64,000 nt of DNA, from positions 124,001 to 188,000 of IMG/VR virus record IMGVR_UViG_3300027899_000001; one strand, given 5' to 3'. Shown one piece after another: positions 1,765 to 58,618 of this stretch. Position numbers and translations under genes: made by a program. A model generated the notes under the pieces. The model did not search any database, was not told where the DNA came from, and saw only the letters and a list, made by a program, of their open reading frames with translations. Positions within the stretch are counted from its first letter, which is position 1. Each line of letters starts with the position of its first letter.

Positions 1765-2304
1765 TTATACGCATAAGTTTTTTCGTTTTATAATTAAATC
1801 TGAAAGTTCTTTTTCAAAATTTGTATTTACTTCTCTTGCCATTGGCAAAACATATTTCTCTGTTTGTTCAAGATACTCTAATATTTTACCAGCAGTATGT
1901 GTATCTAAATGTAAATCAGTAAGGTTACTTATTCTATCTGCACACTTAAGAATTTTTGCATTCTTTGAACCTTTTTCTAACAATCTTTGAAGATATTCTT
2001 CTTTTGTTTCATCTTTAGTTTTTGTAACTTCTAAAACTAAAGTTGCCACTTTATCACCATCACCATCTATGAAACGAATTTCATTAATATTATTATCATT
2101 ATAATCTTCTACAAGATCATGTAATACAGATGCTTTAAGAAGAACTGAGTCATTAAAATATTTATAATCCAATAAAATTCCAAGTGTGGCAAATTGATGT
2201 CTAAATTGATTTCCACCAACTTTACGACTTACACCTATTAATGCCATTGCTTTCATTATATAAGGAGCAAGGACTAAATTTTGTAATGCAAGTAAATTAT
2301 CCAT
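1765..2304 (-). CDS. HD-domain (p)ppGpp hydrolase-like protein (SpoT/Mesh1-type small alarmone hydrolase)
   Basis: H...LHDLVED...LEVTK...KCADRISNL signature. Confidence 0.8.
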   Translation of the reverse strand: MDNLLALQNLVLAPYIMKAMALIGVSRKVGGNQFRHQFATLGILLDYKYFNDSVLLKASVLHDLVEDYNDNNINEIRFIDGDGDKVATLVLEVTKTKDETKEEYLQRLLEKGSKNAKILKCADRISNLTDLHLDTHTAGKILEYLEQTEKYVLPMAREVNTNFEKELSDLIIKRKNLCV

Positions 2305-2325
2305 TTTTTAATATTTAGTATAAGA

Positions 2326-2333
2326 CAAATATA
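2326..2333 (-). promoter_or_regulatory. Bacteroidota-type -7 promoter element TATATTTG
   Basis: Matches TAnnTTTG just upstream of the HD gene; the same element occurs at 4043-4050 (-) and 20835-20842 (+). Confidence 0.55.
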
Positions 2334-2346
2334 ACAACTATTTAAC

Positions 2347-2430
2347 GAATATATAATAAAAGATGGTTAGCTTGCTGAAACAAGCAATGGAAAGGTAAAT
2401 AACCACTGTCCCATCTTTAAATATTTATTC
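2347..2430 (+). ncRNA. Candidate structured 5' leader (three-way junction), copy 1
   Basis: AAAGATGG-TTA-GCTTG(CTGAAA)CAAGC-AA-TGG(12 nt)CCA-CTGTC-CCATCTTT; covaries with 54482-54573. Confidence 0.55.
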
Positions 2431-2454
2431 AATTAAAATAAAAGGTAAAAAATC

Positions 2455-3255
2455 ATGAAAGAATTTAAAAAAACAGAAGATGGGTTTTTCATATGTGAAG
2501 AATGCGAAAAAATATGCGCTGGAAAAATTGGTTTATCTATGCATATAAATAAATATCACAAGTTACAAAATTATTATGATAAATGGCTAAAAGAAGAAAA
2601 TGAAAGTGTTTGTAAAATCTGTGGTGATAAAACTGAATTTATAGGATTATCAAGAGATAATGGATATAAAACTTATTGTTGTAAAGAGTGTGTAGATAAA
2701 GGTAGATATATACAAACGTGTTTAGGAAATGAAAAATTATATGGAGTAAAAAATCCTTATCAGCGTAAAGATATAAAACAAAAAATAAAACAAACTATCA
2801 AAGAACGTTATGGTGATGAAAATTATCGTAATTATAACAAAATAAAAGAAACATGGTTAAAAAAATATGGCGTAGAACATAATATGTATAATAAAGAAAT
2901 TTATGAAAAACAACAGCAAGCGGGGTTTAATGCTAAAACATATAAGTATAACAATATTTTTTATAGAGGCACTTACGAATTTGATTTTTTAGAAAATTTT
3001 TCGTCATTATTTCCAGATATCATAAATTCTATATCAATTAAATATAATTTTGAAGAAAAAGAACATTATTATTTCCCAGACTTCTTTATTCCATCTTTAA
3101 ATCTTATTATTGAAATAAAATCATCATATTTTTATAATAAATTTAAAGATAAATGTAACGTAAAGAAAGCAGCTGCTATTTCCAACGGCTTTAACTATAT
3201 TATGATTATAGATAAAGATTATTCAGAAATAAATTTATTTTTAAAATCTTCGTAA
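2455..3255 (+). CDS. Free-standing homing-endonuclease-like protein (Zn finger, KYGV repeats, C-terminal PD-(D/E)XK)
   Basis: CEEC..H...H; YFPDFFIPSLNLIIEIKS; paralogs at 54597 and 56992. Confidence 0.75.
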   Translation: MKEFKKTEDGFFICEECEKICAGKIGLSMHINKYHKLQNYYDKWLKEENESVCKICGDKTEFIGLSRDNGYKTYCCKECVDKGRYIQTCLGNEKLYGVKNPYQRKDIKQKIKQTIKERYGDENYRNYNKIKETWLKKYGVEHNMYNKEIYEKQQQAGFNAKTYKYNNIFYRGTYEFDFLENFSSLFPDIINSISIKYNFEEKEHYYFPDFFIPSLNLIIEIKSSYFYNKFKDKCNVKKAAAISNGFNYIMIIDKDYSEINLFLKSS

Positions 3256-4022
3256 GTGATAATATCAATATTTTTCTTTTTTGCATTTTTCATTTTACTA
3301 CTTGTTGATGAAAGAGAATCAGTTATAAGATAATTGCAGTTTTTATCTGTTAGTGATACTTCTATAACATTTGAAAATTGTAAAATAAATTCTTCTTTTG
3401 TTTTTGAAATTGGCGAAGGACTTCCTGTCATACAAACTTTTATCGTTCCATTAGGATCATCACCATCTTTTGGTTTATCGATGATAACACCCAATGCTTC
3501 GAGTTCACTTACTGCTTTCTTTATATAGGATACCTTAGACGGTTCTTGAAGCATAGAAACAAGTGCTCTCTCCATACTTGTATAATCTGGAACTAAACCA
3601 CAATATTCTCTTGCAACTTGTTCAGAAAGTTTTCTTCCAACACCATCATATCCCATCATAAGTATTACCTGAGCATATGTAAGAGATTTTATATTTTCAA
3701 ATGCTTCAACAAAAATTTCAAAAGAACGAGAATTATCTTTAATTCCATATTTTTCCATTGAAAATGAACACCTAGTTCTTATTAACTGTAACATATTACG
3801 AACTAATTCATACATGTTATTGAAATCTTCTGCAAAAGGTTCTATAGTTTTTCCACCTATATTTTTAAGATCAAGCATATTAACTGCAGCTCCAAGTTTA
3901 CGAGCTATTACTCCTCCACAATCGGGATTATTACACATTAAATGAATATCATCAAAAGTAAGAGGCTCTCCACATGCAGGACAATATATTGGCATGTATT
4001 TTTGTAATTCTTTATTTATCAT
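3219..4022 (-). CDS. ligA: NAD-dependent DNA ligase, C-terminal part (Zn finger, HhH, BRCT)
   Basis: CPACG..CNNPDC, IGGKT/GVGRK HhH motifs, VCMTGS...SSKMKNA BRCT. Confidence 0.85.
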   Translation of the reverse strand: MINKELQKYMPIYCPACGEPLTFDDIHLMCNNPDCGGVIARKLGAAVNMLDLKNIGGKTIEPFAEDFNNMYELVRNMLQLIRTRCSFSMEKYGIKDNSRSFEIFVEAFENIKSLTYAQVILMMGYDGVGRKLSEQVAREYCGLVPDYTSMERALVSMLQEPSKVSYIKKAVSELEALGVIIDKPKDGDDPNGTIKVCMTGSPSPISKTKEEFILQFSNVIEVSLTDKNCNYLITDSLSSTSSKMKNAKKKNIDIITYEDFKNKFISE

Positions 4023-4089
4023 AATTATTTATTTTTTATATACAAATATAATCATTTTTTATGAAATAGAAAAATATTTAATAGATTAT

Positions 4090-5064
4090 TTACAATATAG
4101 TAAGATTTTTGTTTGAATCAAAAATCCAAAAATTAAAATTGAACCCTTTGTCTAAACATATTTTGCGTTTTACTAAAATTATTTCATTTTTTTTCTTAAA
4201 TGTCCACCAAGATTTAACTTCTATTATTAAATTTTTAGATTTAATAAAAATATCTGGATAATAACTGTGTATTTTATTGTCATGTTCATATTCTATTTTT
4301 CCAAGATGAGTAAATATTTGATGTTTGCCAACTATTATATCATCTTCATTGTATTTTAATAGTAATAAATCTATCGCCCAATCTTCATATCCTTGAATAG
4401 ATACTTGTTTAGAAGAAAAATTATATATTTTATTATTAAATCCTTGTACATACTCTGGAGATTTAGTATGATGATCGTATCCACATTTCTCAATACTATT
4501 TATTTTAATTTTATCTCTTATTTCTTTAATCCATAAATTACTATTTACATCATATCTTTCTTTACATGTTTTTTTTCCTTTTTCCCAATTAGAAAAATAT
4601 TCATCACCATATAATTTTAATTTTGTTTGTTTTGTTTTTTCCTTTATTTGTTTATTTTGAAAAGTGTATTCTGTTCCATATTTTTCTAAACATGTTTGTT
4701 TTGCTTTTTCATTATTATTATATTTTTCATTACCATATTTAAATAATTTAGTAATTTTTGCCTTTTCTATTCTTTTAGCATAATTAGCGTCAAAAATTTT
4801 GCATTTATTAGAACAATATATTCTATATTCTCTATAACTGTTAAATTCTACTAAATGCCCGCAATATTTACATTTAGGTATATCTTTAATATTATTAATA
4901 AGATGATAAAGTCTCTGTACTATTTTTATTTTATAATTATCAATTATTTGATCATCTAAAAATTTAGTATTAGATAAAAGATAAAGATATTCCTTTTTAT
5001 ATTTTTTACAAATTAATTTACTGGGTTTTCCGTAATCGTAAATTTTTTTAAGTTCTTCAAACAT
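4090..5064 (-). CDS. Homing-endonuclease-like protein between the two ligase halves
   Basis: CKYC/YCSNKC, KYG repeats, YYPDIFIKSKNLIIEVKS; GAATATATAAA promoter at 5073-5083. Confidence 0.75.
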   Translation of the reverse strand: MFEELKKIYDYGKPSKLICKKYKKEYLYLLSNTKFLDDQIIDNYKIKIVQRLYHLINNIKDIPKCKYCGHLVEFNSYREYRIYCSNKCKIFDANYAKRIEKAKITKLFKYGNEKYNNNEKAKQTCLEKYGTEYTFQNKQIKEKTKQTKLKLYGDEYFSNWEKGKKTCKERYDVNSNLWIKEIRDKIKINSIEKCGYDHHTKSPEYVQGFNNKIYNFSSKQVSIQGYEDWAIDLLLLKYNEDDIIVGKHQIFTHLGKIEYEHDNKIHSYYPDIFIKSKNLIIEVKSWWTFKKKNEIILVKRKICLDKGFNFNFWIFDSNKNLTIL

Positions 5065-5110
5065 GTTTTTATTTTATATATTCAAAGAAATTTTATAACT
5101 AATGTCCAAA

Positions 5111-6262
5111 CTATTCAGGCGAAAAAATAACTTCTTGAATAGCGGGTATGATATCACCTCGTTTACATAAACTAACTATAGTTCCGGGTTGTATATGATT
5201 TTTGATAATATATCCTGCATTATAGCCCGATGCTCTTTTAACAGTTGTACCGGCTAACTGAACAGGTTTTACTAAAACAACTGGACATAATTCTCCGGTT
5301 TTACCTAAATTCCATTCAATACCTATTACAGTTGTAACAGCTTCTTCTGGCACGAACTTTATCGCAACTGCCCAATTCGGGTCATGTTCATTTTCTCCAA
5401 GAAGTTCTCTATATGCATAATCAAATGAAAATACAACTCCGTCAAGACCTAAATCAAATTGTTCACGAAGTCTTTCATTATTTTTCATTACAGTAATATA
5501 GAGTTGTTCTCTTGGAGGTATTATAGCAGAATATGAAGTTGAAAATATAGGATATTCTTTTACAAGTTTTGTAAAATGTGTTATATCTTCATGATATCCA
5601 TCAATTAAAAAATGAAGAGGAACAAGAGTTATTTCGCTTACCTTTTGAACATCAAAATCATCTTTTCCTATAACTCCTGCAACATAATTACGAGCATTTG
5701 CGAAATCTGCAGCATATTTTTCATTAAAAATCTTTTTACTTATTACTGCCTCACATCTAATTTCTGTAAGAGGTGTAGTGTTGTATTCTGAAAGTTCTTC
5801 ATCATAAAAAAGTTCTGGAAGATATTTCCTAAATCTATCAGTAACATCTTTTCCTGTTTTTCCATCTCCACGAGTAAGAACTGCTTCAAGTTTTGGACCA
5901 CGATATATTATATTAATCGCGCTGCCATCAAATTTAGGAGAATAATGAATGTAAGCACTTTCTCCACCTGCAGCTTTAACTCTGGATTCTCTTTTATTAA
6001 ACCAATCAAAGAATTCCTTTTCCATATAATTGGTTACGCCATCTTTGCTTTCAGTTTGAATTTTTGAAAGAGAACGCATGGGATGTGGATGCGGAAAATC
6101 AAAGTCTTTACGTTTTGATCCTACCTGTTCAATGACTTTAGATCCAGCTTCTTTAAGTTCTTTTTCAAGGACATCAAATGCCGAGTCTGTCATTATTGGA
6201 GTTCCTTCGTAATATGCTATTTTAGCTTTAAGATACTGAGTTTCAAGATTTTGAATATTCAT
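5111..6262 (-). CDS. ligA: NAD-dependent DNA ligase, N-terminal part (adenylation and OB domains)
   Basis: YYEG..D..FD, KFDG, TRGDG..G.DVT, RNY.AG, DGVV, WAVAIKF, RGDIIP. Confidence 0.9.
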   Translation of the reverse strand: MNIQNLETQYLKAKIAYYEGTPIMTDSAFDVLEKELKEAGSKVIEQVGSKRKDFDFPHPHPMRSLSKIQTESKDGVTNYMEKEFFDWFNKRESRVKAAGGESAYIHYSPKFDGSAINIIYRGPKLEAVLTRGDGKTGKDVTDRFRKYLPELFYDEELSEYNTTPLTEIRCEAVISKKIFNEKYAADFANARNYVAGVIGKDDFDVQKVSEITLVPLHFLIDGYHEDITHFTKLVKEYPIFSTSYSAIIPPREQLYITVMKNNERLREQFDLGLDGVVFSFDYAYRELLGENEHDPNWAVAIKFVPEEAVTTVIGIEWNLGKTGELCPVVLVKPVQLAGTTVKRASGYNAGYIIKNHIQPGTIVSLCKRGDIIPAIQEVIFSPE

Positions 6263-6344
6263 ATAAATTTATTTGTTGTAAATATAATACAAATTCTTGA
6301 TATAAAAAAATATTTGGTGACTTATTTAACAAAACATTAACAAT

Positions 6345-6842
6345 TTATTCAGGGAATACGATTTCAATTTTATGTTCTTTAGACATATGACACATACTAC
6401 TTTGAAGAATTTCAAATTGAATAGTAGGGTTTCCGTAATCTGTATCTGTATAAATTTCTATATCTATTGAACCTATAATTACATCATTTATATAATAGAT
6501 ATGTTCTTTTGCATTATCTTCAAATTCTACTATTCTATCATAAATAATTTCAACTTCATCATCTCCTGATACAGTATATGTTATTTTAATTTTGGTTCTA
6601 AATTTGTGATCTGAATAAAATTTAAATCCTAATGGAAAATCACGAAAATATCTATCTTTGTTTTTTGTTAATACACTATATTTAGCAATTTTTACAGTAT
6701 CATGTATATTAAATTTTGGATCAGTTATTGAAAATTTACACTCAGGAATAACCTGTTTTTCAATATTATTATGTTTTAAATATTGAAAAAGTATAATAAT
6801 TGCAATAATTACCAGTGACAATAAAATAAGATTTAATAACAT
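6345..6842 (-). CDS. Hypothetical membrane-anchored protein
   Basis: N-terminal hydrophobic helix. Confidence 0.6.
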   Translation of the reverse strand: MLLNLILLSLVIIAIIILFQYLKHNNIEKQVIPECKFSITDPKFNIHDTVKIAKYSVLTKNKDRYFRDFPLGFKFYSDHKFRTKIKITYTVSGDDEVEIIYDRIVEFEDNAKEHIYYINDVIIGSIDIEIYTDTDYGNPTIQFEILQSSMCHMSKEHKIEIVFPE

Positions 6843-6871
6843 TATGTTTTTGTAATTTTTTTATTTTCATG

Positions 6872-7546
6872 TTATTTTAGTTTTAATTCGTTAATCTGTT
6901 TTTGTAAATCTCTTATAATTTCTAAAAGAGATAAGTTATTAATCATTATATCTGTTGCTGATATATTACCTTTTACGTTTAAATTGTGTGAAGTATCAAC
7001 TACTACAGAGTATTCATTATAATTTGCAGAAGTTATTCCAAGTATTGGACGATTAGTTAACTTATCATTATAAGTATTTCTACCATCTAAAACAATAAGA
7101 GGAATGTTGGATGACTTATCATTACCAGCTATACCTACAAAATATAACCCTGTATCATTTTCATCACTTCCGATTCCTATTATCTCTGGAATAAATCCTT
7201 GAGATGTGCCATTTCCAAATGAAAATCCAAAAGAACCATCGCCTATATGAAGAGCCGTTATAATCGTATCTTTCGGAATAGCCACATCAATCTTATAATT
7301 GAATAATGGATAACGATTTATGCCAATTCTACCATCTGCATAATATATATCTGTATCCTTAAATTTATTATTGACTATAATATTAAGGCTTAAATCTAAT
7401 TCTGACCAAAAAATATTATTCTTTTTATCTTGTGTAAGATATTGATATGTATCAGTATATGAATATTCTGGAACAATTTCTTTCAATGAAAACAAAGAAT
7501 TGTCAAATATTATTTGATTTAAAATTATGTTTCCTTTATTTATCAT
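6872..7546 (-). CDS. Putative virion/tail-associated protein with C-terminal coiled coil
   Basis: GRIGIN motif, Gly-rich beta segments, LLEIIRDLQKQINELK end. Confidence 0.4.
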   Translation of the reverse strand: MINKGNIILNQIIFDNSLFSLKEIVPEYSYTDTYQYLTQDKKNNIFWSELDLSLNIIVNNKFKDTDIYYADGRIGINRYPLFNYKIDVAIPKDTIITALHIGDGSFGFSFGNGTSQGFIPEIIGIGSDENDTGLYFVGIAGNDKSSNIPLIVLDGRNTYNDKLTNRPILGITSANYNEYSVVVDTSHNLNVKGNISATDIMINNLSLLEIIRDLQKQINELKLK

Positions 7547-8319: not shown

Positions 8320-8979
8320 TTATTTTTCAAACCTTTGTCGGGCTGCATCTGTTATGTGTATATAATGTGCTTTTCCTATAAATTCGTCTAATGTTTTTGC
8401 ATTACAATAACTCATTGCTGACTTAAAATAATCTGTAAAATCTTCTGTCCATTGTTGTAATGTGTATTCAACTTTTTGATATTTTGTTATTCCTTCAGCA
8501 GTAACTAACTTTGTTTTTCCCCAACTTCTTTGTACTGCTTTGGTACTCATTCCTCTATATTTCTTTTTAACAGGAAATCCGTATCTCCAAAGTGTTTCTG
8601 CTATTTTATTATTTATTCGTATTCCCCACAGATAATTAAACCCTGCGGATTCGATTGATTTATTAAAGATTGAACCTATCATTACGTAGTCTGCGCCGAG
8701 CGCGAGCGATTTAATTATATCTGAATAATTCCTCATTCCGCCGTCTGCAACGATTTTAGTTGTAAGTCCATATTGTTTTCTCAATTCATAACATTCAGAT
8801 ATAAGAGATCCTAAAGGATAGTTAATAGCTACGTTTGCAGCAGTTGTACATCCACTATTATGTACAATTACTCCATTTATATTATATGAGTGATTATCTT
8901 CTACTTCTAAATCATATATTTTTCCTTCATATAATGATTTTTTAATAGCGTTAATTTTTACTAATTTAAATGTGTTCAT
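8320..8979 (-). CDS. IMPDH/GMP reductase C-terminal half, preceded by the C-part of a split intein
   Basis: 41-aa IntC ending VHN, then SGCTT, ADGG, ALGADYVMIG, YRGMS, AEG. Confidence 0.9.
   Translation of the reverse strand: MNTFKLVKINAIKKSLYEGKIYDLEVEDNHSYNINGVIVHNSGCTTAANVAINYPLGSLISECYELRKQYGLTTKIVADGGMRNYSDIIKSLALGADYVMIGSIFNKSIESAGFNYLWGIRINNKIAETLWRYGFPVKKKYRGMSTKAVQRSWGKTKLVTAEGITKYQKVEYTLQQWTEDFTDYFKSAMSYCNAKTLDEFIGKAHYIHITDAARQRFEK
8857..8979 (-). mobile_element. Split intein C-part (IMPDH-1-like)
   Basis: YDLEVEDNHSYNINGVIVHN|S, i.e. blocks F and G. Confidence 0.9.
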
Positions 8980-8982
8980 TAT

Positions 8983-10014
8983 TTATTGATTTATAAAATT
9001 TATACAATCTAATATTATAGTTTCTTTATTTTTTAAATATTCAGATTCCCATATTATTTTTATATCATATCCATTTTTTCGAGCTTTATCTAATTTAATT
9101 TTTTCATTTTCCCATATTTCGCTTGCATGTAATTTTAAAAATGATAAAGGTATATCATGTGCTTTATATAATTCGGGATTTGCATGAAATTTATCACCAT
9201 TAAATTCTATAATTTTTTTATTATCTTTTACTACAAAATCAAAATTTTTATTAGTTCCACATGCAAATTCGTGATTTAATTCTCCAAAATATATACTTTC
9301 ATATTTATCACATATCTGTTCATAAATTTTCCAAAATATCTGTTGCGATATTTTAGACCAATTTTGTTTATTAATTTTATTAAATTTATGCCAAAATGAT
9401 GTATCAGATAACGTTTGTTTGTATTCTTTATATTTTTTATCTGCTTTTTCTTTTCCTAATTTTTCTATCCATACATCATAAACTGATTTTCCATACATAG
9501 GGTTATTACTTCCGCTTAATGATTGTGATACTTTTTCTCTTTTTAATTCTTTTCTTTTATCTGCTTCTTCTTTTCCATATTTTTTAACCCAAATATCATA
9601 TACAGTTTTTGCATACATTGGATTTTTTTCACCAATATATTTTCCTTTATTTTTTCCTAATAGACTATTATGTAACTTGATACGAGTTTCGGGTTTAACA
9701 ATTTTTCCAGTTTGGGAATCACTTTGTTTTTTTCGGGTTTCATTAGATACAATTTTATGATACATAGGGTTTTTTTCGCCTAATCTACGACAATGTCTAC
9801 AATAGAATTTTTTATTTATATTGGGCAAATTTTGTAAAATAATTTTTTTCCCGCACTCATCACATATAACTATAAATTGGTTGTTAAAAAAATCTTTTCT
9901 TGGTATTTCAACACCATTTTCAGATATTAAAATGTGTTTATTTTTATTTATAATTTTATAAATTATAAATTTTTCATTCTTATAAATTATAGTAGGTATA
10001 ATTTTTTGTTCCAT
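8983..10014 (-). CDS. Vsr-like (EDxHD-type) homing endonuclease with NUMOD3-like repeats
   Basis: Three NPMY repeats; IIEFNGDKFH...GYDIKIIWE. Confidence 0.8.
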   Translation of the reverse strand: MEQKIIPTIIYKNEKFIIYKIINKNKHILISENGVEIPRKDFFNNQFIVICDECGKKIILQNLPNINKKFYCRHCRRLGEKNPMYHKIVSNETRKKQSDSQTGKIVKPETRIKLHNSLLGKNKGKYIGEKNPMYAKTVYDIWVKKYGKEEADKRKELKREKVSQSLSGSNNPMYGKSVYDVWIEKLGKEKADKKYKEYKQTLSDTSFWHKFNKINKQNWSKISQQIFWKIYEQICDKYESIYFGELNHEFACGTNKNFDFVVKDNKKIIEFNGDKFHANPELYKAHDIPLSFLKLHASEIWENEKIKLDKARKNGYDIKIIWESEYLKNKETIILDCINFINQ

Positions 10015-10064
10015 AGTTTTTAATTTATATATTCATACAAATTATGTATGTATGTATATTGATA

Positions 10065-10898
10065 CTAATACTGAATAAGTAAATGTTTATTTATGTCTAA
10101 ATCTTTCGCAGATATCCATTTAGCATATTCTAATAAATTTTCATCATTAACAATATTTTCATATTCCTTTTCTATTATAAAAAATTCGTGATTTTTTGTG
10201 CATTTTATATCATTAATTTCATAAATTTCTTCATTAGTTTCATATTCAAATTTATTAATTACTTTTTTATATTCATTTGAGTGTGTTAATACTTCATCAC
10301 CAATATCAATATTTTCAATATTTTTTTCTTCTTTTTTTAATTTAATATTTTGTCCAGGAATAAAACAGCCGGTGCCTATTGAAATTCTCACATAATCAGC
10401 TCCAGCATTTCCAAGATTAACAAAGGTTTCTGGATTTGCCACATTACCAACCATTAAAATAAGGTGAGGCCAGTTTTTCTTTATTTTTCCAACTAAAGGA
10501 ATTAACTTACTCATATGGCCATTAGCAATATCTATAAGAACATTAGGATAATTATAAAATGCATCATTATTTAAAGGAACCCAAATATCTGGTCTATTAC
10601 ATTCTTTTTCATAATGTTTTAGTTGTGTTTCTATTTCACATAATCCAAATGATTGAAAATAAGAAGATGTAGCTATAAGATGTTTATCAGAATTTCCACG
10701 AGGAATACATGGAATAATGCCTTGTTCAATATATTTGCCATAATTTTCTTCAGATACAACAGTATCCATAGGACTTGCCATTAAAGGTAGTTTATTATTT
10801 TCAGTATATTTTATTTCGCATTCACTTCTACTTGATATTTCGCTTTCTTCAGCAGGATACAAGACGATATCATTTAAATCGAATTTTAATTCTCTCAT
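10065..10898 (-). CDS. IMPDH/GMP reductase N-terminal half plus split intein N-part
   Basis: ASPMDTV, IDIANGH, GNVA, GADYVRISIGTG|CFIPG; no CBS domains. Confidence 0.9.
   Translation of the reverse strand: MRELKFDLNDIVLYPAEESEISSRSECEIKYTENNKLPLMASPMDTVVSEENYGKYIEQGIIPCIPRGNSDKHLIATSSYFQSFGLCEIETQLKHYEKECNRPDIWVPLNNDAFYNYPNVLIDIANGHMSKLIPLVGKIKKNWPHLILMVGNVANPETFVNLGNAGADYVRISIGTGCFIPGQNIKLKKEEKNIENIDIGDEVLTHSNEYKKVINKFEYETNEEIYEINDIKCTKNHEFFIIEKEYENIVNDENLLEYAKWISAKDLDINKHLLIQY
10068..10367 (-). mobile_element. Split intein N-part (100 aa)
   Basis: CFIPG block A and CTKNHEF block B; ends at a TAG stop. Confidence 0.9.
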
Positions 10899-14521: not shown

Positions 14522-17500
14522 TTAGCACTTGGAATATTCGCAGGAATCGCAATGCACACATCCTTCTTCTCGAACTAAATTGCCACCACATTCTGGACAT
14601 TTTTCTTCAAGTTTTTCAATTATATATTTTGAAAGTATTCTTGTTGTAGCAGAACTAAAGGATGTTATATTATCATCAATTTTTCGAATAACTTTTATAA
14701 CATATTGTATTGGTGCTCTTTGTCTTAATAACATTGATGCTGTTAAAGTTAAAGTTCTTTGTTGTACTCGTTCTTCTGCTAATTGAAGATTATCTATTTC
14801 AAACTCACCGTTAATAAATTTGTAATGGCCCTTTTTAACTTTAACAGTTCTTCCGTGTGTATTTTTATCCATTGGTGGATTTTCAAATGCAAATATCTCA
14901 TAAGGCTTTCCTTTATATAAACCTACAATTACAGCAAACTTAATTCCACTTGCAGTTACAACATAATAATCTGCTTTTAATTCTTTAGGACGTTTTGGTG
15001 CATGAACTTCTGAAAAATCGTTTTCTTCTTTTTTGGTTATCAATACTCCTTGTCTTGAACCCTCTCTATAAATCGTACACCCTTTACATCCTGATTTCCA
15101 TGCGTGAAAATAAATTTTATTTACTTCTTCCAAAGATATATTTTCTGGAAGATTATGTGTTACTGAAATACTATGGTCAATCCATTTCTGAATTACTCCT
15201 TGCATTGTAACTTTTTCAATATAATCTATTGTATGAGATTCTGAACCATACCAAGGTGAATCTTTAACAAAACTTTCTACTTCTGCATCAGTTAAACTTT
15301 GTAAAAATTTAAGAGCTCCGTCTTGAGTAAATGTATTATCTGTAGCAGTTGTATACCACTTAATAAATTCAGGATGAAATACATTGTATTCTTGCCATGA
15401 ATCTCCGTTTTCATCTTTATAATCTACTTTGACTCCTGATTCGTTAGGATTTATTTTTCTTCTTCTCTTGTAATAAATCTTAAAAACAGGTTCAATGCCA
15501 GAGGTTGTTCTTGCAAGTATAGCAAGGGAGCCTGTGGGTGCAATAGACAGTGTCGCTATATTTCTTCGACCGTATTTCATATAATCTTTATACTCTGCAT
15601 TATCAAAGTGATTACTGATTACACGAATAATGAAAGGGTTTTGAGCTTCTTTATCTGCATTCCATATTGGAAAACAACCTCTTTCTTTGGCAAGTTGAAC
15701 CGATTCTTTATATGAGTTTACTGCAATAGTTTCAAATACTTTATCAATAAGTGTTGTAGCTTCTTTAGTTCCATATTTAATTCCAAGTTTAGCGAGCATA
15801 TCACCAAGGCCAAGAACTCCAATGCCTGTTCTTCTTCCTTTTCTTAAAACTTCAAGAACTGTTGTCCATACTCTTAATTCTGTTTGTTTTAAATAGAGTT
15901 CTTCTGGGTCACTATTTATTTTGGATATAATAGCCAATATCTTCTCTTCTTCCAATGACACGAGATCATCCATGAGTCTCTGTGAGACTCGAGCCGCTTT
16001 TGCTAATACATTAAAATCAACTTTTGCATTTGATTTATAAGGATTGGATACTACATTATTAAGATTTATAGATAATAACCTGCATGAATCAAATGGTGAC
16101 AGAGGTACTTCTCCGCAATTTTTTACACATATACCCGATGATGTTACAAATAAAGAATCTTCATAATTAGTTATAACGTGATAATTATGATTATCATCAA
16201 CTGTTATATTATAAACATCTTCATATCCATAAAATTCAATCGATTCAACTTTATGATTATTAGCAACTTGATTTCTAAAATTATCAAATGTAGTAAATCT
16301 AAATTCGTTTTCAATTTTTTGAGGATAGCCATTTTCTTTAGCATATTTTCTCCATCCATTTCTAGTAAGCTTTCCTTCTTTTTTAAATAATGTTTTTCCT
16401 GCTGCAATTAAATCGTCATTTGTATACGGGATATATCTTCCATTTTTTTCACCGGGATGAGAAGCAAATGATTGTTTGAATTCATCTGACATTTTATGAT
16501 AAGGATTTTTATCTCCTCTCATTCTTGCTGCATGAAATTCTATATGTTCATCACGTAACATTTTTACTAAATTTTCTGGACGATCATTTTTATTATTAAA
16601 ATCATAATGATGTATAGAATAAAGTTTATGATCAGTTTGTTCATCTTGATTAAAAAATTCATAAATTAGATGATATTGTCTTCTATTTCTAAAATTTCCT
16701 CCTGACATTTTGACTCCAGTTCTTGATACTTGTCTATAACCATTAGCGTCAAATGAATAGAAAGGTATTAAAGATTCTCCTAAAGATAAATCTTTTAATT
16801 GTTTATAATCTAATTTTGATGTTAAAATTTTATGATCGGGTGTTGCAATAAGTTCTGAACCATCATCCAATTTTAATTTCCATACTTCTGCTTTTTTCTT
16901 TGTTAAACGAGGATTTCTTGCCCATTTAATTTCAGTTTTTCCAGTTATTGGATTTGTAGAATATACTGGCACATCTAGTCTTTCATCAGTTAATTGTTTT
17001 ATTGATACCGCGTTTCTTCCATCAGCAGTTGCAATTAAAGTATTTCCTACAATACAAGGATTCGTTCCTTTAGTTGTAAAGCCTTCATCAGCATAACAAT
17101 CTGCTGGAGATTCTTTAATAATGTTATCCCAAAAGAGAATACCCGGCTCGGCATTTTTATGAGCTTGTTTAATTATTAAATCCCACAGTTCCTTTGCCTT
17201 AACTTTCATTATATAAGAACCGTCATCTCTTTTATATAATTTATTGTAAACCATTTGTTCTAAGAATACTGGTTGGTCATCAGTTATAGGCCATCTTAAA
17301 ATATAATCTGCATCTGCTTCAACTGCATGCATAAATTCATCAGTTATTTTCACAGACACATTTGCTCCTGTTACTTTTGTAAGATCATCCTTTTTTGTAA
17401 TAAATTTAGGACTATCTGGATGAGCGATATGCATAGAAATCATAAGTGCTCCACGTCTTCCATCTTGTGCAACTTCACGAGTAGAATGAGAATATCTATC

Positions 17501-17986
17501 CATAAATGATATTGAACCTGTCGATGTTTGAGCAGCGTTATTAACTTTAGCTTGTGAAGGTCTTAAGCCTTCAAGTGTTATTCCAACTCCTCCTCTACGT
17601 TTCATTAACTGAACCATAGATTCGTCTATATTAAAAATTCCTCCATAAGAATCTGCTCCATTATCTATAAAAAAGCAATTTCCTAAAGATGAAATCTGGT
17701 GTTTATTTCCTAATCCAAAAAGTATTGAACCTCCAGGAATGCAATACTTAAAGTGTTCTAAATGTTCTTTTATTGTTTCTCTTGTTAGAGCGTTAGGATA
17801 GTTCATTTCCATTCTATGAAATTCGTCTATCATTCTTGTTATTGTTTCTGTTGGGTGGCCTTCTTCCCATTTGCCATTGTTTTTAAGGGCGTACTTCTTT
17901 GCCCACACGTCGGAGGCGAGAGAGTCATTTTCAAAATAAGACATTCCCGCCTCTACTAACTGTTTTTCAGTATATTCAGTACTCAT
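14522..17986 (-). CDS. nrdJ: Class II (B12-dependent) ribonucleotide reductase with intein and C-terminal Zn ribbon
   Basis: SLGNCF, RRGALM, TNP|C..N|CGE, SIAPTG, SGIEP, IDHSIS.T.N, KGCTIYR; CPEC..CDSC. Confidence 0.92.
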   Translation of the reverse strand: MSTEYTEKQLVEAGMSYFENDSLASDVWAKKYALKNNGKWEEGHPTETITRMIDEFHRMEMNYPNALTRETIKEHLEHFKYCIPGGSILFGLGNKHQISSLGNCFFIDNGADSYGGIFNIDESMVQLMKRRGGVGITLEGLRPSQAKVNNAAQTSTGSISFMDRYSHSTREVAQDGRRGALMISMHIAHPDSPKFITKKDDLTKVTGANVSVKITDEFMHAVEADADYILRWPITDDQPVFLEQMVYNKLYKRDDGSYIMKVKAKELWDLIIKQAHKNAEPGILFWDNIIKESPADCYADEGFTTKGTNPCIVGNTLIATADGRNAVSIKQLTDERLDVPVYSTNPITGKTEIKWARNPRLTKKKAEVWKLKLDDGSELIATPDHKILTSKLDYKQLKDLSLGESLIPFYSFDANGYRQVSRTGVKMSGGNFRNRRQYHLIYEFFNQDEQTDHKLYSIHHYDFNNKNDRPENLVKMLRDEHIEFHAARMRGDKNPYHKMSDEFKQSFASHPGEKNGRYIPYTNDDLIAAGKTLFKKEGKLTRNGWRKYAKENGYPQKIENEFRFTTFDNFRNQVANNHKVESIEFYGYEDVYNITVDDNHNYHVITNYEDSLFVTSSGICVKNCGEVPLSPFDSCRLLSINLNNVVSNPYKSNAKVDFNVLAKAARVSQRLMDDLVSLEEEKILAIISKINSDPEELYLKQTELRVWTTVLEVLRKGRRTGIGVLGLGDMLAKLGIKYGTKEATTLIDKVFETIAVNSYKESVQLAKERGCFPIWNADKEAQNPFIIRVISNHFDNAEYKDYMKYGRRNIATLSIAPTGSLAILARTTSGIEPVFKIYYKRRRKINPNESGVKVDYKDENGDSWQEYNVFHPEFIKWYTTATDNTFTQDGALKFLQSLTDAEVESFVKDSPWYGSESHTIDYIEKVTMQGVIQKWIDHSISVTHNLPENISLEEVNKIYFHAWKSGCKGCTIYREGSRQGVLITKKEENDFSEVHAPKRPKELKADYYVVTASGIKFAVIVGLYKGKPYEIFAFENPPMDKNTHGRTVKVKKGHYKFINGEFEIDNLQLAEERVQQRTLTLTASMLLRQRAPIQYVIKVIRKIDDNITSFSSATTRILSKYIIEKLEEKCPECGGNLVREEGCVHCDSCEYSKC
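16118..17056 (-). mobile_element. Intein (313 aa) with HNH endonuclease, in the RNR active-site loop
   Basis: CIVGNT, ATPDHK, IHHYDFNNKND..NL, VYNITVDDNHNY...VKN|C. Confidence 0.9.
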
Positions 17987-18055: not shown

Positions 18056-19531
18056 TTATGCAATAAAAGTGCTAGCAGTTGACTTCCTTTTATTTAGAAT
18101 TTCTTTCAATGCTTCTGCTTCTTTTTCTGCTATAAATGATAGTTTTTTAGACTGTCTTCTTTGAGTATAATATTCAGTTAAAATTTCTGGAAGTAAAGGT
18201 TCATAAGATGCATCAAAGACTGCGCCGCTTGATGTTTTGATTTCTGTGTTCTTTGGAATATATGATTTATCTTTCTTTATGAAATTTTCAATGGATAACT
18301 TAAACTGTCTCATTATTGAGGGATAAAGAGACGCAAAGTCAAAAGATGCAACCCAAGGATAAAGATTAGGAATTGGTTGAAAAACAAAAGCTCCTTCATA
18401 AGATTCTCTATCTTTTTTATCTTCTCTTTTTGGAAAAATTTGGCCTCTTTTATATGCATATCTTACTAAAGTTGCTTCTAAAGTAAAGATAGGTGAAAAT
18501 GCATCCATTGCCTCAACTCTTGTGATATTTGCTAATCCTAAGAATGTTCCCATAGTTTTTAACTTTGTATCTAAAAGTTCTACAAGAACACTGTCTATGG
18601 CATTATAAAATACGTATTGAGGAAAATCTTTTTGATATTGTTCTTGAAGTGTGCCAGGATATTTTACTTTTCTAACTTCTAATGCTTCTTCTGATACAAA
18701 ATCTAATGTATCATTTTCTTTTACTTCAATAGTTCTATCCCATTTTTGATATATTGACATATAATCAACAATAAGTTTATGTTGAGGCAACATTATAACC
18801 ACATCAGCATTTTTATCTTTAATTTTATGTTCATACCATTGTCCTGTTGGAGATAACCAAGATACATCTAAATTAAGTTTTTTGCATCTATTCATTAAAT
18901 ATCTCCAATCATATCCCCAAAAGTTCCAGCCTGTTATAAGTGGAGAAACTCTAACATAATTATAAAGAAAATCATAAAGCATATCTGCTTCATTTGCATG
19001 GTATTTATAAATAAAGCGATATTTTTTTCCAAATTTCTTAACATGATCATTTATATTTTTTTCAATTGTTTTACAATCTTCTCCACTTAATATCTTACTT
19101 CCGAAGACTGTTATATCAGGATATTGAGAAAAAGCTACTGTAGTTACTTTATTTTGTGCAGTTTCAGGATCTGCAAATCCTTCATCTGTTACCTCTACTT
19201 CAATATCTGCTACTGAAAGCTTAGGCATATTAGGTTCAAATAAATGTGATGTAAGTTCTTCACCAGCATCTATAAAGAATTCTTGAGTTCTATATCTATT
19301 AAGAAATTGTGTCGGAACTTTTCTTACTGGCTTAAAATCCCAAGATTGCAATCCTTGAACTGCTCCGCCTCTTTGAGCATACATATACATATACTGTTGA
19401 TTAGCCGGAATGTTTAATTGTGTAAACCCAATCATTCCATCTTTTTTTACATATGATATGATAAATTTTTGAGGTCTCTGTTCTATATTTATAATCATTT
19501 CTTTTGTATTTTGTATTATATGTATTGACAT
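18056..19531 (-). CDS. Family B DNA polymerase, N-terminal subunit (exonuclease plus motif A; gp43A-like)
   Basis: DIE, TGWN..YD, YNAIDS, SFDFASLYPSIM; stops before motifs B and C. Confidence 0.85.
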   Translation of the reverse strand: MSIHIIQNTKEMIINIEQRPQKFIISYVKKDGMIGFTQLNIPANQQYMYMYAQRGGAVQGLQSWDFKPVRKVPTQFLNRYRTQEFFIDAGEELTSHLFEPNMPKLSVADIEVEVTDEGFADPETAQNKVTTVAFSQYPDITVFGSKILSGEDCKTIEKNINDHVKKFGKKYRFIYKYHANEADMLYDFLYNYVRVSPLITGWNFWGYDWRYLMNRCKKLNLDVSWLSPTGQWYEHKIKDKNADVVIMLPQHKLIVDYMSIYQKWDRTIEVKENDTLDFVSEEALEVRKVKYPGTLQEQYQKDFPQYVFYNAIDSVLVELLDTKLKTMGTFLGLANITRVEAMDAFSPIFTLEATLVRYAYKRGQIFPKREDKKDRESYEGAFVFQPIPNLYPWVASFDFASLYPSIMRQFKLSIENFIKKDKSYIPKNTEIKTSSGAVFDASYEPLLPEILTEYYTQRRQSKKLSFIAEKEAEALKEILNKRKSTASTFIA

Positions 19532-50973: not shown

Positions 50974-52164
50974 ATGAAAATAGTACGAGAACATATAAAT
51001 GAAAAATTTTCTGAAGAATCTGATCCTGTACATGATTTAGGCATAGGCATAATACATGCTATTGAAAAATTCTGTGATAAACACAGAAAAGTGATAATGC
51101 CTACTTATGAGTGTGATGAAAAAGATATTATGCTATTAATATGTGTTGATAGAAAAAAGCATGATTATGTAGAAGATTTATTAAAATTAGGAGCTAATGT
51201 ACATACAAGCGCTGGAATACATCTGGGTAATGAAGATCTACCTGTTAGATACGCAATATGGAACAATGATTATGAAATGACAGAATTATTATTAAAATAT
51301 GGAGCATCTATAGAAAACGCATTTGATGAGGATGTTCTTGAACTTATAGAAACTGGAGATTATATGGGTGGAAAAAAAAGTAAAGAATTAATAGACTTAG
51401 TAAAACAACATTTAGAAAAACCAGTAAATGAAAAATTTTCTGAAGAATCAGATCCTATATATGATTTAGGAATAGGAATAATTACAAAACTTAGAAAATT
51501 TTTAAAAGATCATCACTGCGATAATTTTGATTTACGTTATAAACCTGATCAAGATAAAGCTCTTTCTTTATGTGTTAAAACCAATACTCCAGATTTTATA
51601 CAGTATTTAGTATCATTGGGAGCAGACCCTAATTTTAGTCCTGAAGATAAAGATTTTGGGTTATATTTAATGAATGCTGCATACGTAGAAGATTGGGAAG
51701 TTTGTAAAGCTTTAGTTAATAGCGGAGCAGATTTAGATAAAACTATAACATGTTCGATAGATAGACAGACTCCGATAACTTTAAAAAATCTTGAAAGATT
51801 TAAAGAAATGATAGAAAATCCTATAAATGAAAAATTTTCAGAAAAATCAGATCCTATTAAAGATATGGGTATAGGTTTATATACAATAAGAAATTTTGAA
51901 AATTTAAATGAAATAGCAGAATTTATCATATCTATAATGCCATATATTTTAAAAACACATAAAATTCCTGAAGATATTATACATTCTGAGGCTTTTATAC
52001 TAAAACAAAAATATATTAAACCTCTTGATAATTATATTTATAAATATATTAGATTAAATAATGAAGAAATAACATCAGCAATAGATTATAAATTATTTGA
52101 AAATATGTTAAGTATTTTAGCAAAAAGAGGCTTTAAATATCCTAAAACTAAATTCATACATTAA
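50974..52164 (+). CDS. Tag family polyprotein, 3 modules (ankyrin, ankyrin, RxF-class), inverted orientation
   Basis: Three tags; LLKLGANV, LLKYGA, LVSLGADPN. Confidence 0.82.
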   Translation: MKIVREHINEKFSEESDPVHDLGIGIIHAIEKFCDKHRKVIMPTYECDEKDIMLLICVDRKKHDYVEDLLKLGANVHTSAGIHLGNEDLPVRYAIWNNDYEMTELLLKYGASIENAFDEDVLELIETGDYMGGKKSKELIDLVKQHLEKPVNEKFSEESDPIYDLGIGIITKLRKFLKDHHCDNFDLRYKPDQDKALSLCVKTNTPDFIQYLVSLGADPNFSPEDKDFGLYLMNAAYVEDWEVCKALVNSGADLDKTITCSIDRQTPITLKNLERFKEMIENPINEKFSEKSDPIKDMGIGLYTIRNFENLNEIAEFIISIMPYILKTHKIPEDIIHSEAFILKQKYIKPLDNYIYKYIRLNNEEITSAIDYKLFENMLSILAKRGFKYPKTKFIH

Positions 52165-58147: not shown

Positions 58148-58618
58148 TTACATTTCTTTATTTATTTTATACAATTCTCTTCCGTGAGCTTTAAGTTTCT
58201 TTGCCAATTGTCTACTTGTAAACTCTTCAGCGCCATTATCTTTTAATAATTTAATCATATCTTCATCTTCATTACTTTTTGCAGTGTTTAGGATGCCATA
58301 GTGTATAGAAAGATGTAAATTTGCTCCTTTTTCTATTAGCCATTTTGCTAATTCTAAATTTTTATTAAGAACTACCCACTCTATAACTGATCCTCTATAC
58401 GCATTTATATCTGCGCCGTTTTCAATTAAATATTTTACATAATCTTCTTTATTTTGTTTAGCACAGTATAATAAACAAGTATCAATATCAACATAATCTG
58501 ATTTTGTAAGTTTTTTTACAAATTCTTTTATTTTATGCATCATTCCAATATCCATGTCTTTTATTGGATCCGATTCTTCTTTAAACTTTTCGTTTATATA
58601 TTCTCTAACTAATTTCAT
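58148..58618 (-). CDS. Tag family, ankyrin payload
   Basis: INEKFKEESDPIKDMDIG; VKYLIENGADIN, WLIEKGAN. Confidence 0.82.
   Translation of the reverse strand: MKLVREYINEKFKEESDPIKDMDIGMMHKIKEFVKKLTKSDYVDIDTCLLYCAKQNKEDYVKYLIENGADINAYRGSVIEWVVLNKNLELAKWLIEKGANLHLSIHYGILNTAKSNEDEDMIKLLKDNGAEEFTSRQLAKKLKAHGRELYKINKEM

What the first reader, a model, noticed from the sequence alone, without database searches (positions are those of the whole stretch)
3219..6262. NAD-dependent DNA ligase split in two by an endonuclease gene, with no intein or visible intron
Seen: the adenylation+OB half ends ...RGDIIPAIQEVIFSPE*, and the Zn-finger/HhH/BRCT half restarts after a 324-aa endonuclease. Neither end has intein blocks, the spacers are only 46 and 67 nt, and the C-half has its own TATATTTG element (4043-4050). 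Established: Aeromonas phage Aeh1 nrdA is split by mobE and works as a non-covalent composite. Inference: a naturally two-subunit LigA.
Basis: partly seen in the sequence, partly recalled or inferred. Interest (0 to 1): 0.65.

Follow-up and report, generated by a model that had tools for sequence, protein, structure and literature searches.

The report
Phage DNA ligase split by endonuclease
A 405-kb freshwater phage carries its only DNA ligase as two separate genes with a selfish endonuclease gene between them; this looks like a working two-subunit enzyme, but the same split is already known, and structurally solved, in T5-like phages.

Summary
On the minus strand lie an N-half (5111-6262: domain Ia, adenylation, OB), a 324-aa endonuclease gene (4090-5064, Pfam DUF7487) and a C-half (3219-4022: Zn finger, HhH, BRCT). 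The spacers are 46 and 67 nt. I found no intein block and no Rfam intron.

Relatives from metagenomes settle what it is. Among the 120 best relatives, 81 alleles are uninterrupted (612-654 aa) and 31 stop 4-14 residues after the GDIIP motif. The gap holds a DUF7487 gene, an unrelated GIY-YIG gene, or nothing. Both halves stay open with dN/dS of 0.1-0.4, as in intact genes. Both halves sit behind the same recurrent promoter-like motif. The two-subunit reading is therefore well supported, though untested at the bench.

It is not new in kind. Phage T5 has ligA and ligB split at the same OB/Zn-finger boundary, and PDB 9HU3/9I5I hold a two-chain T5-like ligase. Salmonella phage SP3 even has a GIY-YIG gene between the two.

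What is new is detail. This is an independent, highly polymorphic split in a jumbo-phage clade (at least 17 state changes on the tree). It also has a ligase-linked DUF7487 endonuclease lineage with a PD-(D/E)xK fold.

The parts
6279..6315 (-). Bipartite promoter-like motif in front of the ligase N-half (AAATATTTTTTTATATCA-N8-TTATATTTA)
   Evidence: The same motif class stands upstream of about 20 genes of the 405-kb genome. TTATATTT[AG] is found in 24 of 418 upstream regions against 5.4 expected, and the bipartite regex in 13 against 1.5 expected.
5111..6262 (-). Ligase N-half (383 aa): domain Ia, adenylation domain with KFDG, and OB fold ending just after motif VI (KRGDIIP); stop TAG at 5111-5113
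   Evidence: One search aligns residues 20-381 with E. coli LigA 2OWO residues 26-393 (8.7e-28). One search aligns it end to end with T5 LigA, and both stop at the same aligned position.
5053..5089 (-). Hairpin whose 3' arm is the endonuclease start codon plus 9 nt; the loop and 5' arm carry the GAATATATAAAATAAAA motif (5067-5083)
   Evidence: a 12-bp stem, not more stable than shuffles (z 0.46). The stem is kept in L038, L039 and L040, with a C-G to G-C change on both sides in L040. ATATAAA is found in 122 of 418 upstream regions against 29 expected.
4090..5064 (-). Free-standing endonuclease gene (324 aa): Cys4 zinc ribbon, helical KYG repeats and a C-terminal PD-(D/E)xK nuclease domain (Pfam DUF7487)
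   Evidence: DUF7487, 6.7e-37. (phrog_3339 'homing endonuclease', 3.1e-11). (invariant E227, D271, K284; near-invariant E282); model pLDDT 90, residues 207-321 match TnsA 1t0f at Z 8.8, rmsd 2.8 over 107 residues. Orthologues lie in the same ligase gap in L038 and L039.
4043..4079 (-).
   Evidence: It belongs to the same motif class as the one before the N-half. Homologous copies stand in spacer 2 of L019, L026, L035 and L038 and in the endonuclease-free spacer of L030.
3219..4022 (-). Ligase C-half (267 aa): Zn finger (C14, C17, C30, C35), HhH region and BRCT
   Evidence: phrog_3869 positions 387-654 of 656, and phrog_3498, a 256-position family of stand-alone C-halves. T. filiformis LigA residues 401-655, and 9hu3_B 'DNA ligase subunit B'.
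2455..3255 (+). Second DUF7487 endonuclease gene (266 aa), convergent with the ligase C-half and overlapping its 3' end by 37 nt
   Evidence: (DUF7487, 1.3e-21). (28% identity to the endonuclease in the gap).

Best explanation
The phage's only DNA ligase gene was cut at the linker between the OB fold and the Zn finger by a mobile cassette. The cassette carries a free-standing homing-endonuclease gene with its own promoter-like motif and a start-codon hairpin, followed by a promoter and start codon for the downstream part.

Shown here:
- The break adds a stop, a start and about 4 residues, and removes nothing.
- No intein or intron is present.
- Intact alleles, split alleles with either of two unrelated endonuclease families, and split alleles with an empty gap all coexist in the clade.
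- Both halves evolve like the intact genes.

Inferred:
- The N-half (Ia-NTase-OB) and the C-half (Zn-HhH-BRCT) are made separately from the same promoter class.
- They assemble without a covalent bond, probably around nicked DNA, into an active NAD+-dependent ligase, as in the T5-type LigA/LigB enzyme.
- The DUF7487 protein is a PD-(D/E)xK homing endonuclease tied to the ligase locus. It is translated mainly from transcripts that start inside the hairpin.
- The cassette spreads between co-infecting phages by recombination, which turns intact ligase genes into split ones.
For: Anatomy.

The junction maps to a linker. Intact L020 reads GDIIPEIQSVTIESEVTFELPTICSHC. The window reads GDIIPAIQEVIFSPE* then MINKELQKYMPIYCPAC.

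Relatives:
- L020-L025 hold uninterrupted genes of 617-642 aa.
- Among the 120 best relatives, 81 are intact and 31 end 4-14 residues after GDIIP.
- The split/intact label needs 22 changes on the tree, at least 17 on well-supported branches.

Gap contents:
- DUF7487: window, L038, L039.
- GIY-YIG: L019, L026, L031, L033, L035.
- Nothing: L030 and the P0005 contig.

Selection: dN/dS is 0.12-0.38 for both halves in split-split pairs and 0.13-0.44 in intact-intact pairs, with dS saturated.

Recombination at the junction: L035 groups with L036 in the N-half tree (support 100), while L036 groups with L026 in the C-half tree (support 98).

Expression signals: both halves share one bipartite motif class and the endonuclease has another.

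No other ligase: the adenylation domain occurs once in the genome, and no ATP-ligase domain is present.

Precedent:
- T5 ligA/ligB are split at the same aligned position.
- More than 500 T5-like records are annotated as subunits A and B.
- A GIY-YIG ORF lies between them in phage SP3.
- PDB 9HU3/9I5I hold a two-chain T5-like ligase.

Complex prediction: ipSAE 0.51 against a best control of 0.00, rated weak support. The runs agree in at least 94% of contacts and the partner's pLDDT is at least 79.

Endonuclease fold.
Against: There are no RNA or protein data. The only run that holds the sequence is a DNA metagenome.

The complex score is in the weak band. At 0.60 or under sat only 5 of the 78 solved complexes and all 4 mismatches that passed, and the score may reflect memory of single-chain LigA structures.

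dS is above 1 in nearly all pairs, so the dN/dS values are rough.

The whole clade, split or not, lacks the motif IV lysine: S, A or T in 115 of 119 alleles. From memory, that lysine is essential in E. coli LigA, so the chemistry of this clade's ligase may differ.

The host ligase could cover for a dead phage gene.

Endonuclease activity and target are not known. In L040 an orthologue sits beside an intact ligase that has the usual KAGDIIPE motif. That motif is therefore not obviously the target.
Confidence: 0.8

Rival explanations
1. The ligase is a dead gene in two pieces. The endonuclease insertion inactivated it and the phage relies on the host's LigA.
For: There are no direct activity data. 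The whole clade lacks the motif IV lysine. The C-half is so diverged that Pfam sees only a weak BRCT.
Against: Both ORFs are complete. KFDG, motifs III, IIIa, V and VI and all four Zn-finger cysteines are present. dN/dS for both halves matches that of intact alleles. A six-member clade consists only of split alleles. Split alleles that lost the endonuclease keep both ORFs and the C-half promoter motif. The C-half has its own promoter-like motif and start codon, and these are conserved across relatives. The T5-type two-chain enzyme exists as a solved structure.
Confidence: 0.1
2. The halves are rejoined after transcription or translation, by a group I intron that carries the endonuclease ORF, or by a split intein or other trans-splicing.
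For: Endonuclease genes in phages often sit in introns or inteins. In this same window an IMPDH gene is healed by a split intein. [quoted passage not shown]
Against: No Rfam family hits at E<=5 in the window region, or at E<=1 in four related loci. Only 113 nt of the gap are non-coding. Endonuclease-free gaps are 97-166 nt. No intein or Hint family hits either half. Compared with intact alleles the halves carry only about 4 extra residues, which leaves no room for the roughly 100 + 35 residues of a split intein. The N-half ends in a conserved stop and the C-half begins with a conserved MI(N/D)KELQKYMP head.
Confidence: 0.03
3. The two halves have become functionally separate. The N-half works alone or with another DNA-binding partner such as a clamp, and the C-half is an independent DNA-binding or BRCT scaffold protein.
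For: N- and C-half trees are discordant, so the halves can be exchanged independently. The complex prediction gave only weak support.
Against: The halves stay adjacent, on the same strand and behind the same promoter class in every split allele fetched. Both are kept at similar dN/dS. From established knowledge of LigA domain deletions (recalled, not tested here), Ia-NTase-OB fragments self-adenylate but need Zn-HhH for nick binding and sealing.
Confidence: 0.07

Closest known systems
Two-gene NAD+-dependent DNA ligase of phage T5 and other Demerecviridae (ligA/ligB; PDB 9HU3 and 9I5I hold a two-chain T5-like enzyme)
   Same: The break is at the same aligned position, after OB motif VI and before the Zn finger (T5 ...RAGGVIPCIVERVYD* / MKIEIPTQCPSCG). 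The second gene has its own promoters. Some members carry an endonuclease gene in the gap, e.g. GIY-YIG in Salmonella phage SP3.
   Different: The N-half is only 26% identical. In the window's clade most alleles are intact, so the split arose separately there. Here the gap holds a DUF7487 PD-(D/E)xK gene. The state is polymorphic, whereas it is near-universal in the T5-like records listed.
   Same: A free-standing endonuclease gene lies between two halves of an essential DNA-metabolism gene, on the same strand and without an intein or intron. A hairpin and a late-promoter-like element stand at the endonuclease start (for the paper; here).
   Different: The host gene and the endonuclease family differ (HNH in Aeh1, Vsr-like in the SbcD case). 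Here the gap is occupied in different relatives by two unrelated endonuclease families, or by none.
Fractured genes with split inteins (Dassa et al. 2009), including IMPDH-1 and one DNA ligase locus
   Same: The gene order is the same: half, endonuclease, half. The habitat is similar (freshwater metagenome). The same window holds such an IMPDH locus at 8320-10898.
   Different: The ligase halves carry no intein parts, so no protein splicing can rejoin them.
PD-(D/E)xK homing endonucleases (I-Ssp6803I; I-Bth0305I / Vsr-like family) and the TnsA nuclease domain
   Same: The C-terminal domain of the DUF7487 protein has the restriction-endonuclease-like fold: TnsA Z 8.8, Vsr Z 6.8, I-Bth0305I Z 6.2, I-Ssp6803I Z 4.9. 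E...D...ExK residues are conserved.
   Different: There is no significant sequence match to those families; the TnsA-like Pfam hit is below its cut-off. The N-terminal parts differ (Cys4 ribbon plus KYG helical repeats). The gene is free-standing rather than encoded in an intron.

Membership tests
NAD+-dependent DNA ligase (LigA) | Adenylation (NTase) domain with the KxDG lysine and motifs III, IIIa and V | tested here: met
   Pfam DNA_ligase_aden 4.9e-25. KFDG, EIRCE, FANARN and AIKF align with M. tuberculosis LigA. KxDG is present in 120 of 120 relatives.
NAD+-dependent DNA ligase (LigA) | Motif IV lysine (DGVVxK) | tested here: not met
   The window has DGVVFS where M. tuberculosis has DGVVVK. 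The position is S, A or T in 115 of 119 alleles of the clade, intact ones included. This is a clade trait and is not linked to the split.
NAD+-dependent DNA ligase (LigA) | OB fold with motif VI, then a Cys4 Zn finger, HhH and BRCT | tested here: met
   DNA_ligase_OB 6.3e-19. C14, C17, C30 and C35 are read. The C-half aligns with T. filiformis LigA residues 401-655 and with phrog_3869 positions 387-654 of 656. BRCT is weak (E 0.0022, below the cut-off).
NAD+-dependent DNA ligase (LigA) | All domains on one polypeptide | tested here: not met
   There are two ORFs, 1,088 nt apart.
Two-subunit LigA of the T5 type | Break between the OB fold and the Zn finger, with each part having its own start and stop | tested here: met
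Two-subunit LigA of the T5 type | Common descent with T5 ligA/ligB | tested here: not met
   Identity is 26%. The window's clade is mostly intact alleles, with T5 as a very long outgroup branch. The split here is therefore an independent origin.
Two-subunit LigA of the T5 type | The two chains form one enzyme | tested here: inconclusive
   ipSAE 0.51 against a best control of 0.00, rated weak support. At least 94% of contacts are shared between runs and the partner's pLDDT is at least 79.
Gene fractured by a free-standing homing endonuclease (Aeh1 nrdA-mobE type) | Endonuclease ORF between the halves, with uninterrupted alleles in relatives | tested here: met
Gene fractured by a free-standing homing endonuclease (Aeh1 nrdA-mobE type) | The endonuclease cuts endonuclease-free alleles and is copied into them | not testable with these tools
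   The evidence is indirect only: at least 17 state changes on the tree, discordant half trees, and junction-proximal residues that travel with the split.
Intein or split intein | Hint/intein splicing blocks at the break | tested here: not met
   No intein or Hint family hits either half at E<=0.01. Only about 4 residues are extra compared with intact alleles. Positive control: the IMPDH pieces next door give Hint_2 and Intein_splicing hits.
Group I or II intron with an endonuclease ORF | Ribozyme core around the ORF | tested here: not met
   Rfam found nothing at E<=5 or at E<=1 in four related loci. The spacers are 46 and 67 nt.
DUF7487 (Pfam PF24308) / PD-(D/E)xK nucleases | Profile match over the curated cut-off, nuclease fold, and conserved acidic and lysine residues | tested here: met
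   128 bits against a cut-off of 27. TnsA Z 8.8. E227, D271 and K284 are invariant in 41 sequences. Nuclease activity itself was not tested.

The most novel reading that the evidence does not exclude
The OB/Zn-finger linker of phage LigA may be a shared landing site for which at least two unrelated endonuclease families compete: GIY-YIG and a ligase-linked DUF7487 PD-(D/E)xK lineage. On this reading the whole split module moves between phages as one unit. The module comprises the N-half tail with altered motif VI, the endonuclease, the C-half promoter and the new C-half head. It has turned intact ligase genes into two-subunit genes many times (at least 17 state changes among 112 alleles). T5-type ligA/ligB with an empty gap would then be the end state after the endonuclease is lost.
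Probability: 0.5. Interest if true: 0.5.

Novelty: new member of a known kind. Interest (0 to 1): 0.4.

Why it matters
The locus shows that splitting LigA between the OB fold and the Zn finger is tolerated repeatedly in nature, not only in T5-like phages. That marks a natural split point for engineering two-part ligases.

The clade offers a large natural series for studying homing-endonuclease gain, replacement and loss at one site. It contains intact alleles, alleles split by either of two endonuclease families, and split alleles with an empty gap.

It also gives a concrete biological role and a testable substrate (ligase alleles) to a Pfam family of unknown function, DUF7487.

None of this overturns current understanding.

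Tried and rejected
- **TAnnTTTG as a general promoter element.** It is not enriched upstream of genes (24 of 418 against 25.2 expected). Only the longer TTATATTT[AG] bipartite motif is enriched.
- **Sigma-70 and terminator scans.** These were uninformative: 30 promoter-like sites against 31.7 in shuffles, and 0 terminators.
- **Hairpin stability.** The hairpin at the endonuclease start is not more stable than shuffles (z 0.46). I kept it only because it covers the AUG and is conserved in 4 orthologous loci, with one change on both sides. Four loci are too few for statistics.
- **Close relatives of the endonuclease in viral contigs.** The search found only the same phage. The word search found the orthologues instead.
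- **Foldseek against the PDB for the endonuclease model.** There was no match at E<=0.001. The wide structural search gave the nuclease fold.
- **Literature.** I found no paper on 9HU3/9I5I or on biochemistry of a two-subunit LigA in the held library.
- **RNA evidence.** No RNA run holds the locus. The DNA contigs laid only confirm the assembly and may come from the source sample.
- **Complex prediction.** It gave weak support only and is not used as proof.
- **Motif VI as the endonuclease target.** I considered this because Ala is replaced by Arg or Ser in split alleles. I did not adopt it, because L040 carries an orthologous endonuclease next to an intact ligase with the usual motif.
- **Steps not taken.** I did not build or search a joined N+C protein; the halves were handled separately by reference throughout. 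I did not use the large profile search.
Full report
**1. The observation**

The window is bases 124,001-188,000 of a 405,016-bp virus record with direct terminal repeats. G+C is about 29%. The only public run that holds the stretch is a freshwater metagenome.

Three ORFs lie in a row on the minus strand:
- 5111-6262, 383 aa
- 4090-5064, 324 aa
- 3219-4022, 267 aa

Pfam calls the first one NAD-ligase adenylation plus OB domains. It calls the second DUF7487, with weak TnsA-like nuclease hits. In the third it finds only a weak BRCT. PHROGs places the third ORF on positions 387-654 of a 656-position NAD-ligase profile. It also places it on a 256-position family made of stand-alone C-halves.

The spacers are 46 and 67 nt, and TATATTTG lies at 4050->4043 on the minus strand.

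The arrangement is identical in a second IMG/VR record (L018). It is also identical in an 18.6-kb Logan contig with no differences, but that run may be the source sample.

**2. No intein, no intron**

- No intein or Hint family hits either half.
- The same library does find such domains in the IMPDH pieces 2-5 kb upstream, so the method works in this genome.
- Rfam finds nothing at E<=5 in 2000-7500, and nothing at E<=1 in four related loci.
- Set beside uninterrupted relatives, the break falls in the linker between OB motif VI and the first Zn-finger cysteine. Intact L020 reads GDIIPEIQSVTIESEVTFELPTICSHC. The window reads GDIIPAIQEVIFSPE* then MINKELQKYMPIYCPAC. That is about 4 residues more and none fewer, which leaves no room for split-intein parts.

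**3. What relatives show**

A scan of viral contigs gave six loci with uninterrupted genes of 617-642 aa, at 51-58% identity. It also gave two closer loci (62-65%) that are split at the same place, but by a 222-223-aa GIY-YIG gene.

The word search gave 120 relatives at 53-66% identity. Of these, 81 are 612-654 aa long and 31 end 4-14 residues after GDIIP. On a tree of the N-half region, the split/intact label needs 22 changes, at least 17 of them on well-supported branches. Several sister pairs differ in state.

I fetched further split loci and looked in the gap:

| Gap content | Loci |
|---|---|
| DUF7487 orthologue | window, L038, L039 |
| GIY-YIG gene | L019, L026, L031, L033, L035 |
| Nothing (166 nt and 97 nt) | L030, the P0005 contig |

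Spacer sequences are homologous across these classes:
- GAATATATAAA(A/T)TAAA stands before either kind of endonuclease.
- AAAAATGATTATATTT stands before the C-half.
- The empty L030 spacer keeps the first ~30 nt of the window's spacer 1.

The tail ...(I/V)I(F/Y)SPE* and the head MI(N/D)KELQKYMP are shared by alleles with different gap contents. The simplest reading is one old split whose gap has since seen endonuclease replacement and loss. Separate splits with other tails and heads also exist (L031: ...RVII* / MKNIEIMGG...; L033: ...NFIT* / MSNEELKYLPETC).

**4. Are the halves still in use?**

- Both ORFs are complete. Motifs I (KFDG), III, IIIa, V and VI and all four cysteines are present.
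- By Nei-Gojobori estimates, split-split pairs give dN/dS of 0.13-0.34 for the N-half and 0.12-0.38 for the C-half. Intact-intact pairs give 0.13-0.44. dS is saturated, so these figures are rough.
- One six-member clade consists only of split alleles.
- The genome has one LigA adenylation domain and no ATP-dependent ligase domain.
- The complex prediction for the two halves scored 0.51 against 0.00 for the best of three controls, rated weak support. The runs agree in at least 94% of contacts and the partner's pLDDT is at least 79. In the tool's calibration, only 5 of 78 solved complexes and all 4 passing mismatches sat at 0.60 or under. Memory of single-chain LigA structures could also explain the score.

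One caution applies. The whole clade, intact alleles included, has S, A or T where other LigAs have the motif IV lysine. This is unrelated to the split, but it means the enzyme's chemistry is not textbook.

**5. Expression signals**

I crudely called 418 ORFs in the genome and looked at their upstream regions. Two motif classes recur.

- Class 1 is GAATATATAAAATAAA, 7-30 nt before the ATG. ATATAAA occurs in 122 upstream regions against 29 expected, and TATAAAAT in 61 against 8.8. It precedes the endonuclease.
- Class 2 is the bipartite AAATATTTTTTTATATCA-N8-10-TTATATTT(A/G)C. TTATATTT[AG] occurs in 24 upstream regions against 5.4 expected, and the bipartite regex in 13 against 1.5. It precedes both the N-half (6315->6279) and the C-half (4079->4043).

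TAnnTTTG by itself is not enriched (24 against 25.2).

The endonuclease start codon and the next 9 nt can pair with the 12 nt just upstream of the class 1 motif (5089->5053). The stem is kept in L038, L039 and L040, with a C-G to G-C change on both sides in L040. The GIY-YIG genes have analogous stems over or next to their AUG. This matches the hairpin plus late-promoter design that Dassa et al. describe for gene-fracturing endonucleases (PMC2677866). With four loci it is an observation, not a statistical result.

**6. The endonuclease**

- PHROGs labels its family 'homing endonuclease'.
- The genome holds 12 further stretches with similarity to it, at only 26-33% identity.
- Outside the genome there is a tight group of 11 proteins at 53-78% identity, followed by a drop to 42% or less.
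- Those I could place lie in the ligase gap (L038, L039). In L040 the orthologue lies immediately upstream of an intact 636-aa ligase. This lineage is therefore tied to the ligase locus.
- An AlphaFold model built from 41 sequences has pLDDT 90. Residues 207-324 match PD-(D/E)xK nucleases: TnsA Z 8.8 (rmsd 2.8, 107 residues), Vsr Z 6.8, I-Bth0305I Z 6.2.
- E227, D271 and K284 are invariant.

**7. Signs of movement by recombination**

N-half and C-half trees disagree. L035 pairs with L036 in the N-half tree (support 100), while L036 pairs with L026 in the C-half tree (support 98). L035 and L036 are 87% identical in the N-half but 60% in the C-half.

The residue before GD in motif VI is Ala in 75 of 85 intact alleles, but in only 6 of 31 split ones, which mostly have Arg or Ser. 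In 17 independent split/intact contrasts, the change goes the same way in about 14 and the other way in 0 (median sign-test p 1.2e-4). One search gives the DNA view.

Either the last ~15 codons of the N-half travel with the cassette, or they are reshaped in split alleles. I do not take the motif as the cleavage site, because L040 has an orthologous endonuclease beside an intact ligase with the usual motif.

**8. What is known**

- Phage T5 has ligA (323 aa...RAGGVIPCIVERVYD*) and ligB (259 aa, MKIEIPTQCPSCG...). They are 202 nt apart with two annotated promoters between them. A paper names them subunits A and B (PMC3632103).
- T5 LigA aligns end to end with the window's N-half, and both stop at the same aligned position.
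- 616 phage records match the T5 ligA-ligB region. The T5-like ones among the rows listed are annotated with two ligase genes.
- Salmonella phage SP3 has a GIY-YIG ORF between the two genes. Vibrio phage Skimmer has three small ORFs there.
- PDB 9HU3 and 9I5I hold a 339-aa 'DNA ligase (NAD(+))' chain and a 248-aa 'DNA ligase subunit B' chain. These are close relatives of T5 LigA (8e-104) and LigB (3.8e-80).
- Dassa et al. 2009 describe endonuclease-fractured genes with split inteins, including IMPDH and one DNA ligase. They also describe an intein-less SbcD-like case, and they cite the Aeh1 and phage 25 precedents.

**9. Verdict**

It is a new member of a known kind. The split is independent of the T5 one: identity is 26% and most of the window's clade is intact. 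It sits in a jumbo freshwater phage and is occupied here by a DUF7487 PD-(D/E)xK endonuclease.

The parts worth following up are the polymorphism, the turnover of two endonuclease families at one site, and the ligase-linked DUF7487 lineage.

I did not build or search a joined N+C sequence; the halves were always handled separately by reference.

Noticed in passing
window 8320-10898 (-): An IMPDH/GMP-reductase-like gene is fractured with a split intein. 10065-10898 holds IMPDH profile positions up to 178 plus the Hint/intein N-part. 8983-10014 is a NUMOD3 endonuclease ORF. 8320-8979 holds the intein C-part (...VIVHN|S) plus IMPDH profile positions 178-339. Relatives have uninterrupted IMPDH of 348-362 aa. 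This is the IMPDH arrangement of Dassa et al. 2009.
   Followed up: partly
window 14522-17986 (-): The ribonucleotide reductase large subunit (1154 aa) carries a contiguous intein at about residues 321-603 (Intein_splicing 3.4e-13).
   Followed up: no
window 18056-19531 (-) and G000:C1:93069-93995 (-), outside the window: The family B DNA polymerase appears to be in two distant genes. The 491-aa ORF in the window covers the exonuclease domain and DNA_pol_B profile positions 16-154. Positions 152-413 lie in a 393-aa frame about 49 kb away.
   Followed up: partly
whole genome; in the window e.g. 5067-5083, 4043-4079, 6279-6315: Two recurrent upstream motif classes exist. GAATATATAAAATAAA lies close to many start codons. 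The bipartite AAATATTTTTTTATATCA-N8-10-TTATATTT(A/G)C stands before about 20 genes. They probably mark two promoter or timing classes.
   Followed up: partly
window 54597-55538 (+), 56992-58137 (+), 2455-3255 (+); genome-wide: The genome holds about 13 DUF7487 endonuclease genes. Twelve stretches show only 26-33% identity to the one in the ligase gap. Several lie on the strand opposite to their neighbours. What they sit next to was not examined.
   Followed up: no
L040 2501-5430: An orthologue of the gap endonuclease (61% identity) sits immediately upstream of an uninterrupted 636-aa ligase. The class 2 promoter motif lies between them. The same endonuclease lineage therefore occupies two different positions at the ligase locus.
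   Followed up: partly
ligase N-half, window about 5430-5450 (motif IV) and 5140-5165 (motif VI): The motif IV lysine is replaced clade-wide by S, A or T (115 of 119 alleles). The motif VI residue before GD is Ala in intact alleles and Arg or Ser in most split alleles, across independent contrasts.
   Followed up: partly
window 50974-52164 (+) and 58148-58618 (-): Two ankyrin-repeat proteins are encoded in a phage genome.
   Followed up: no
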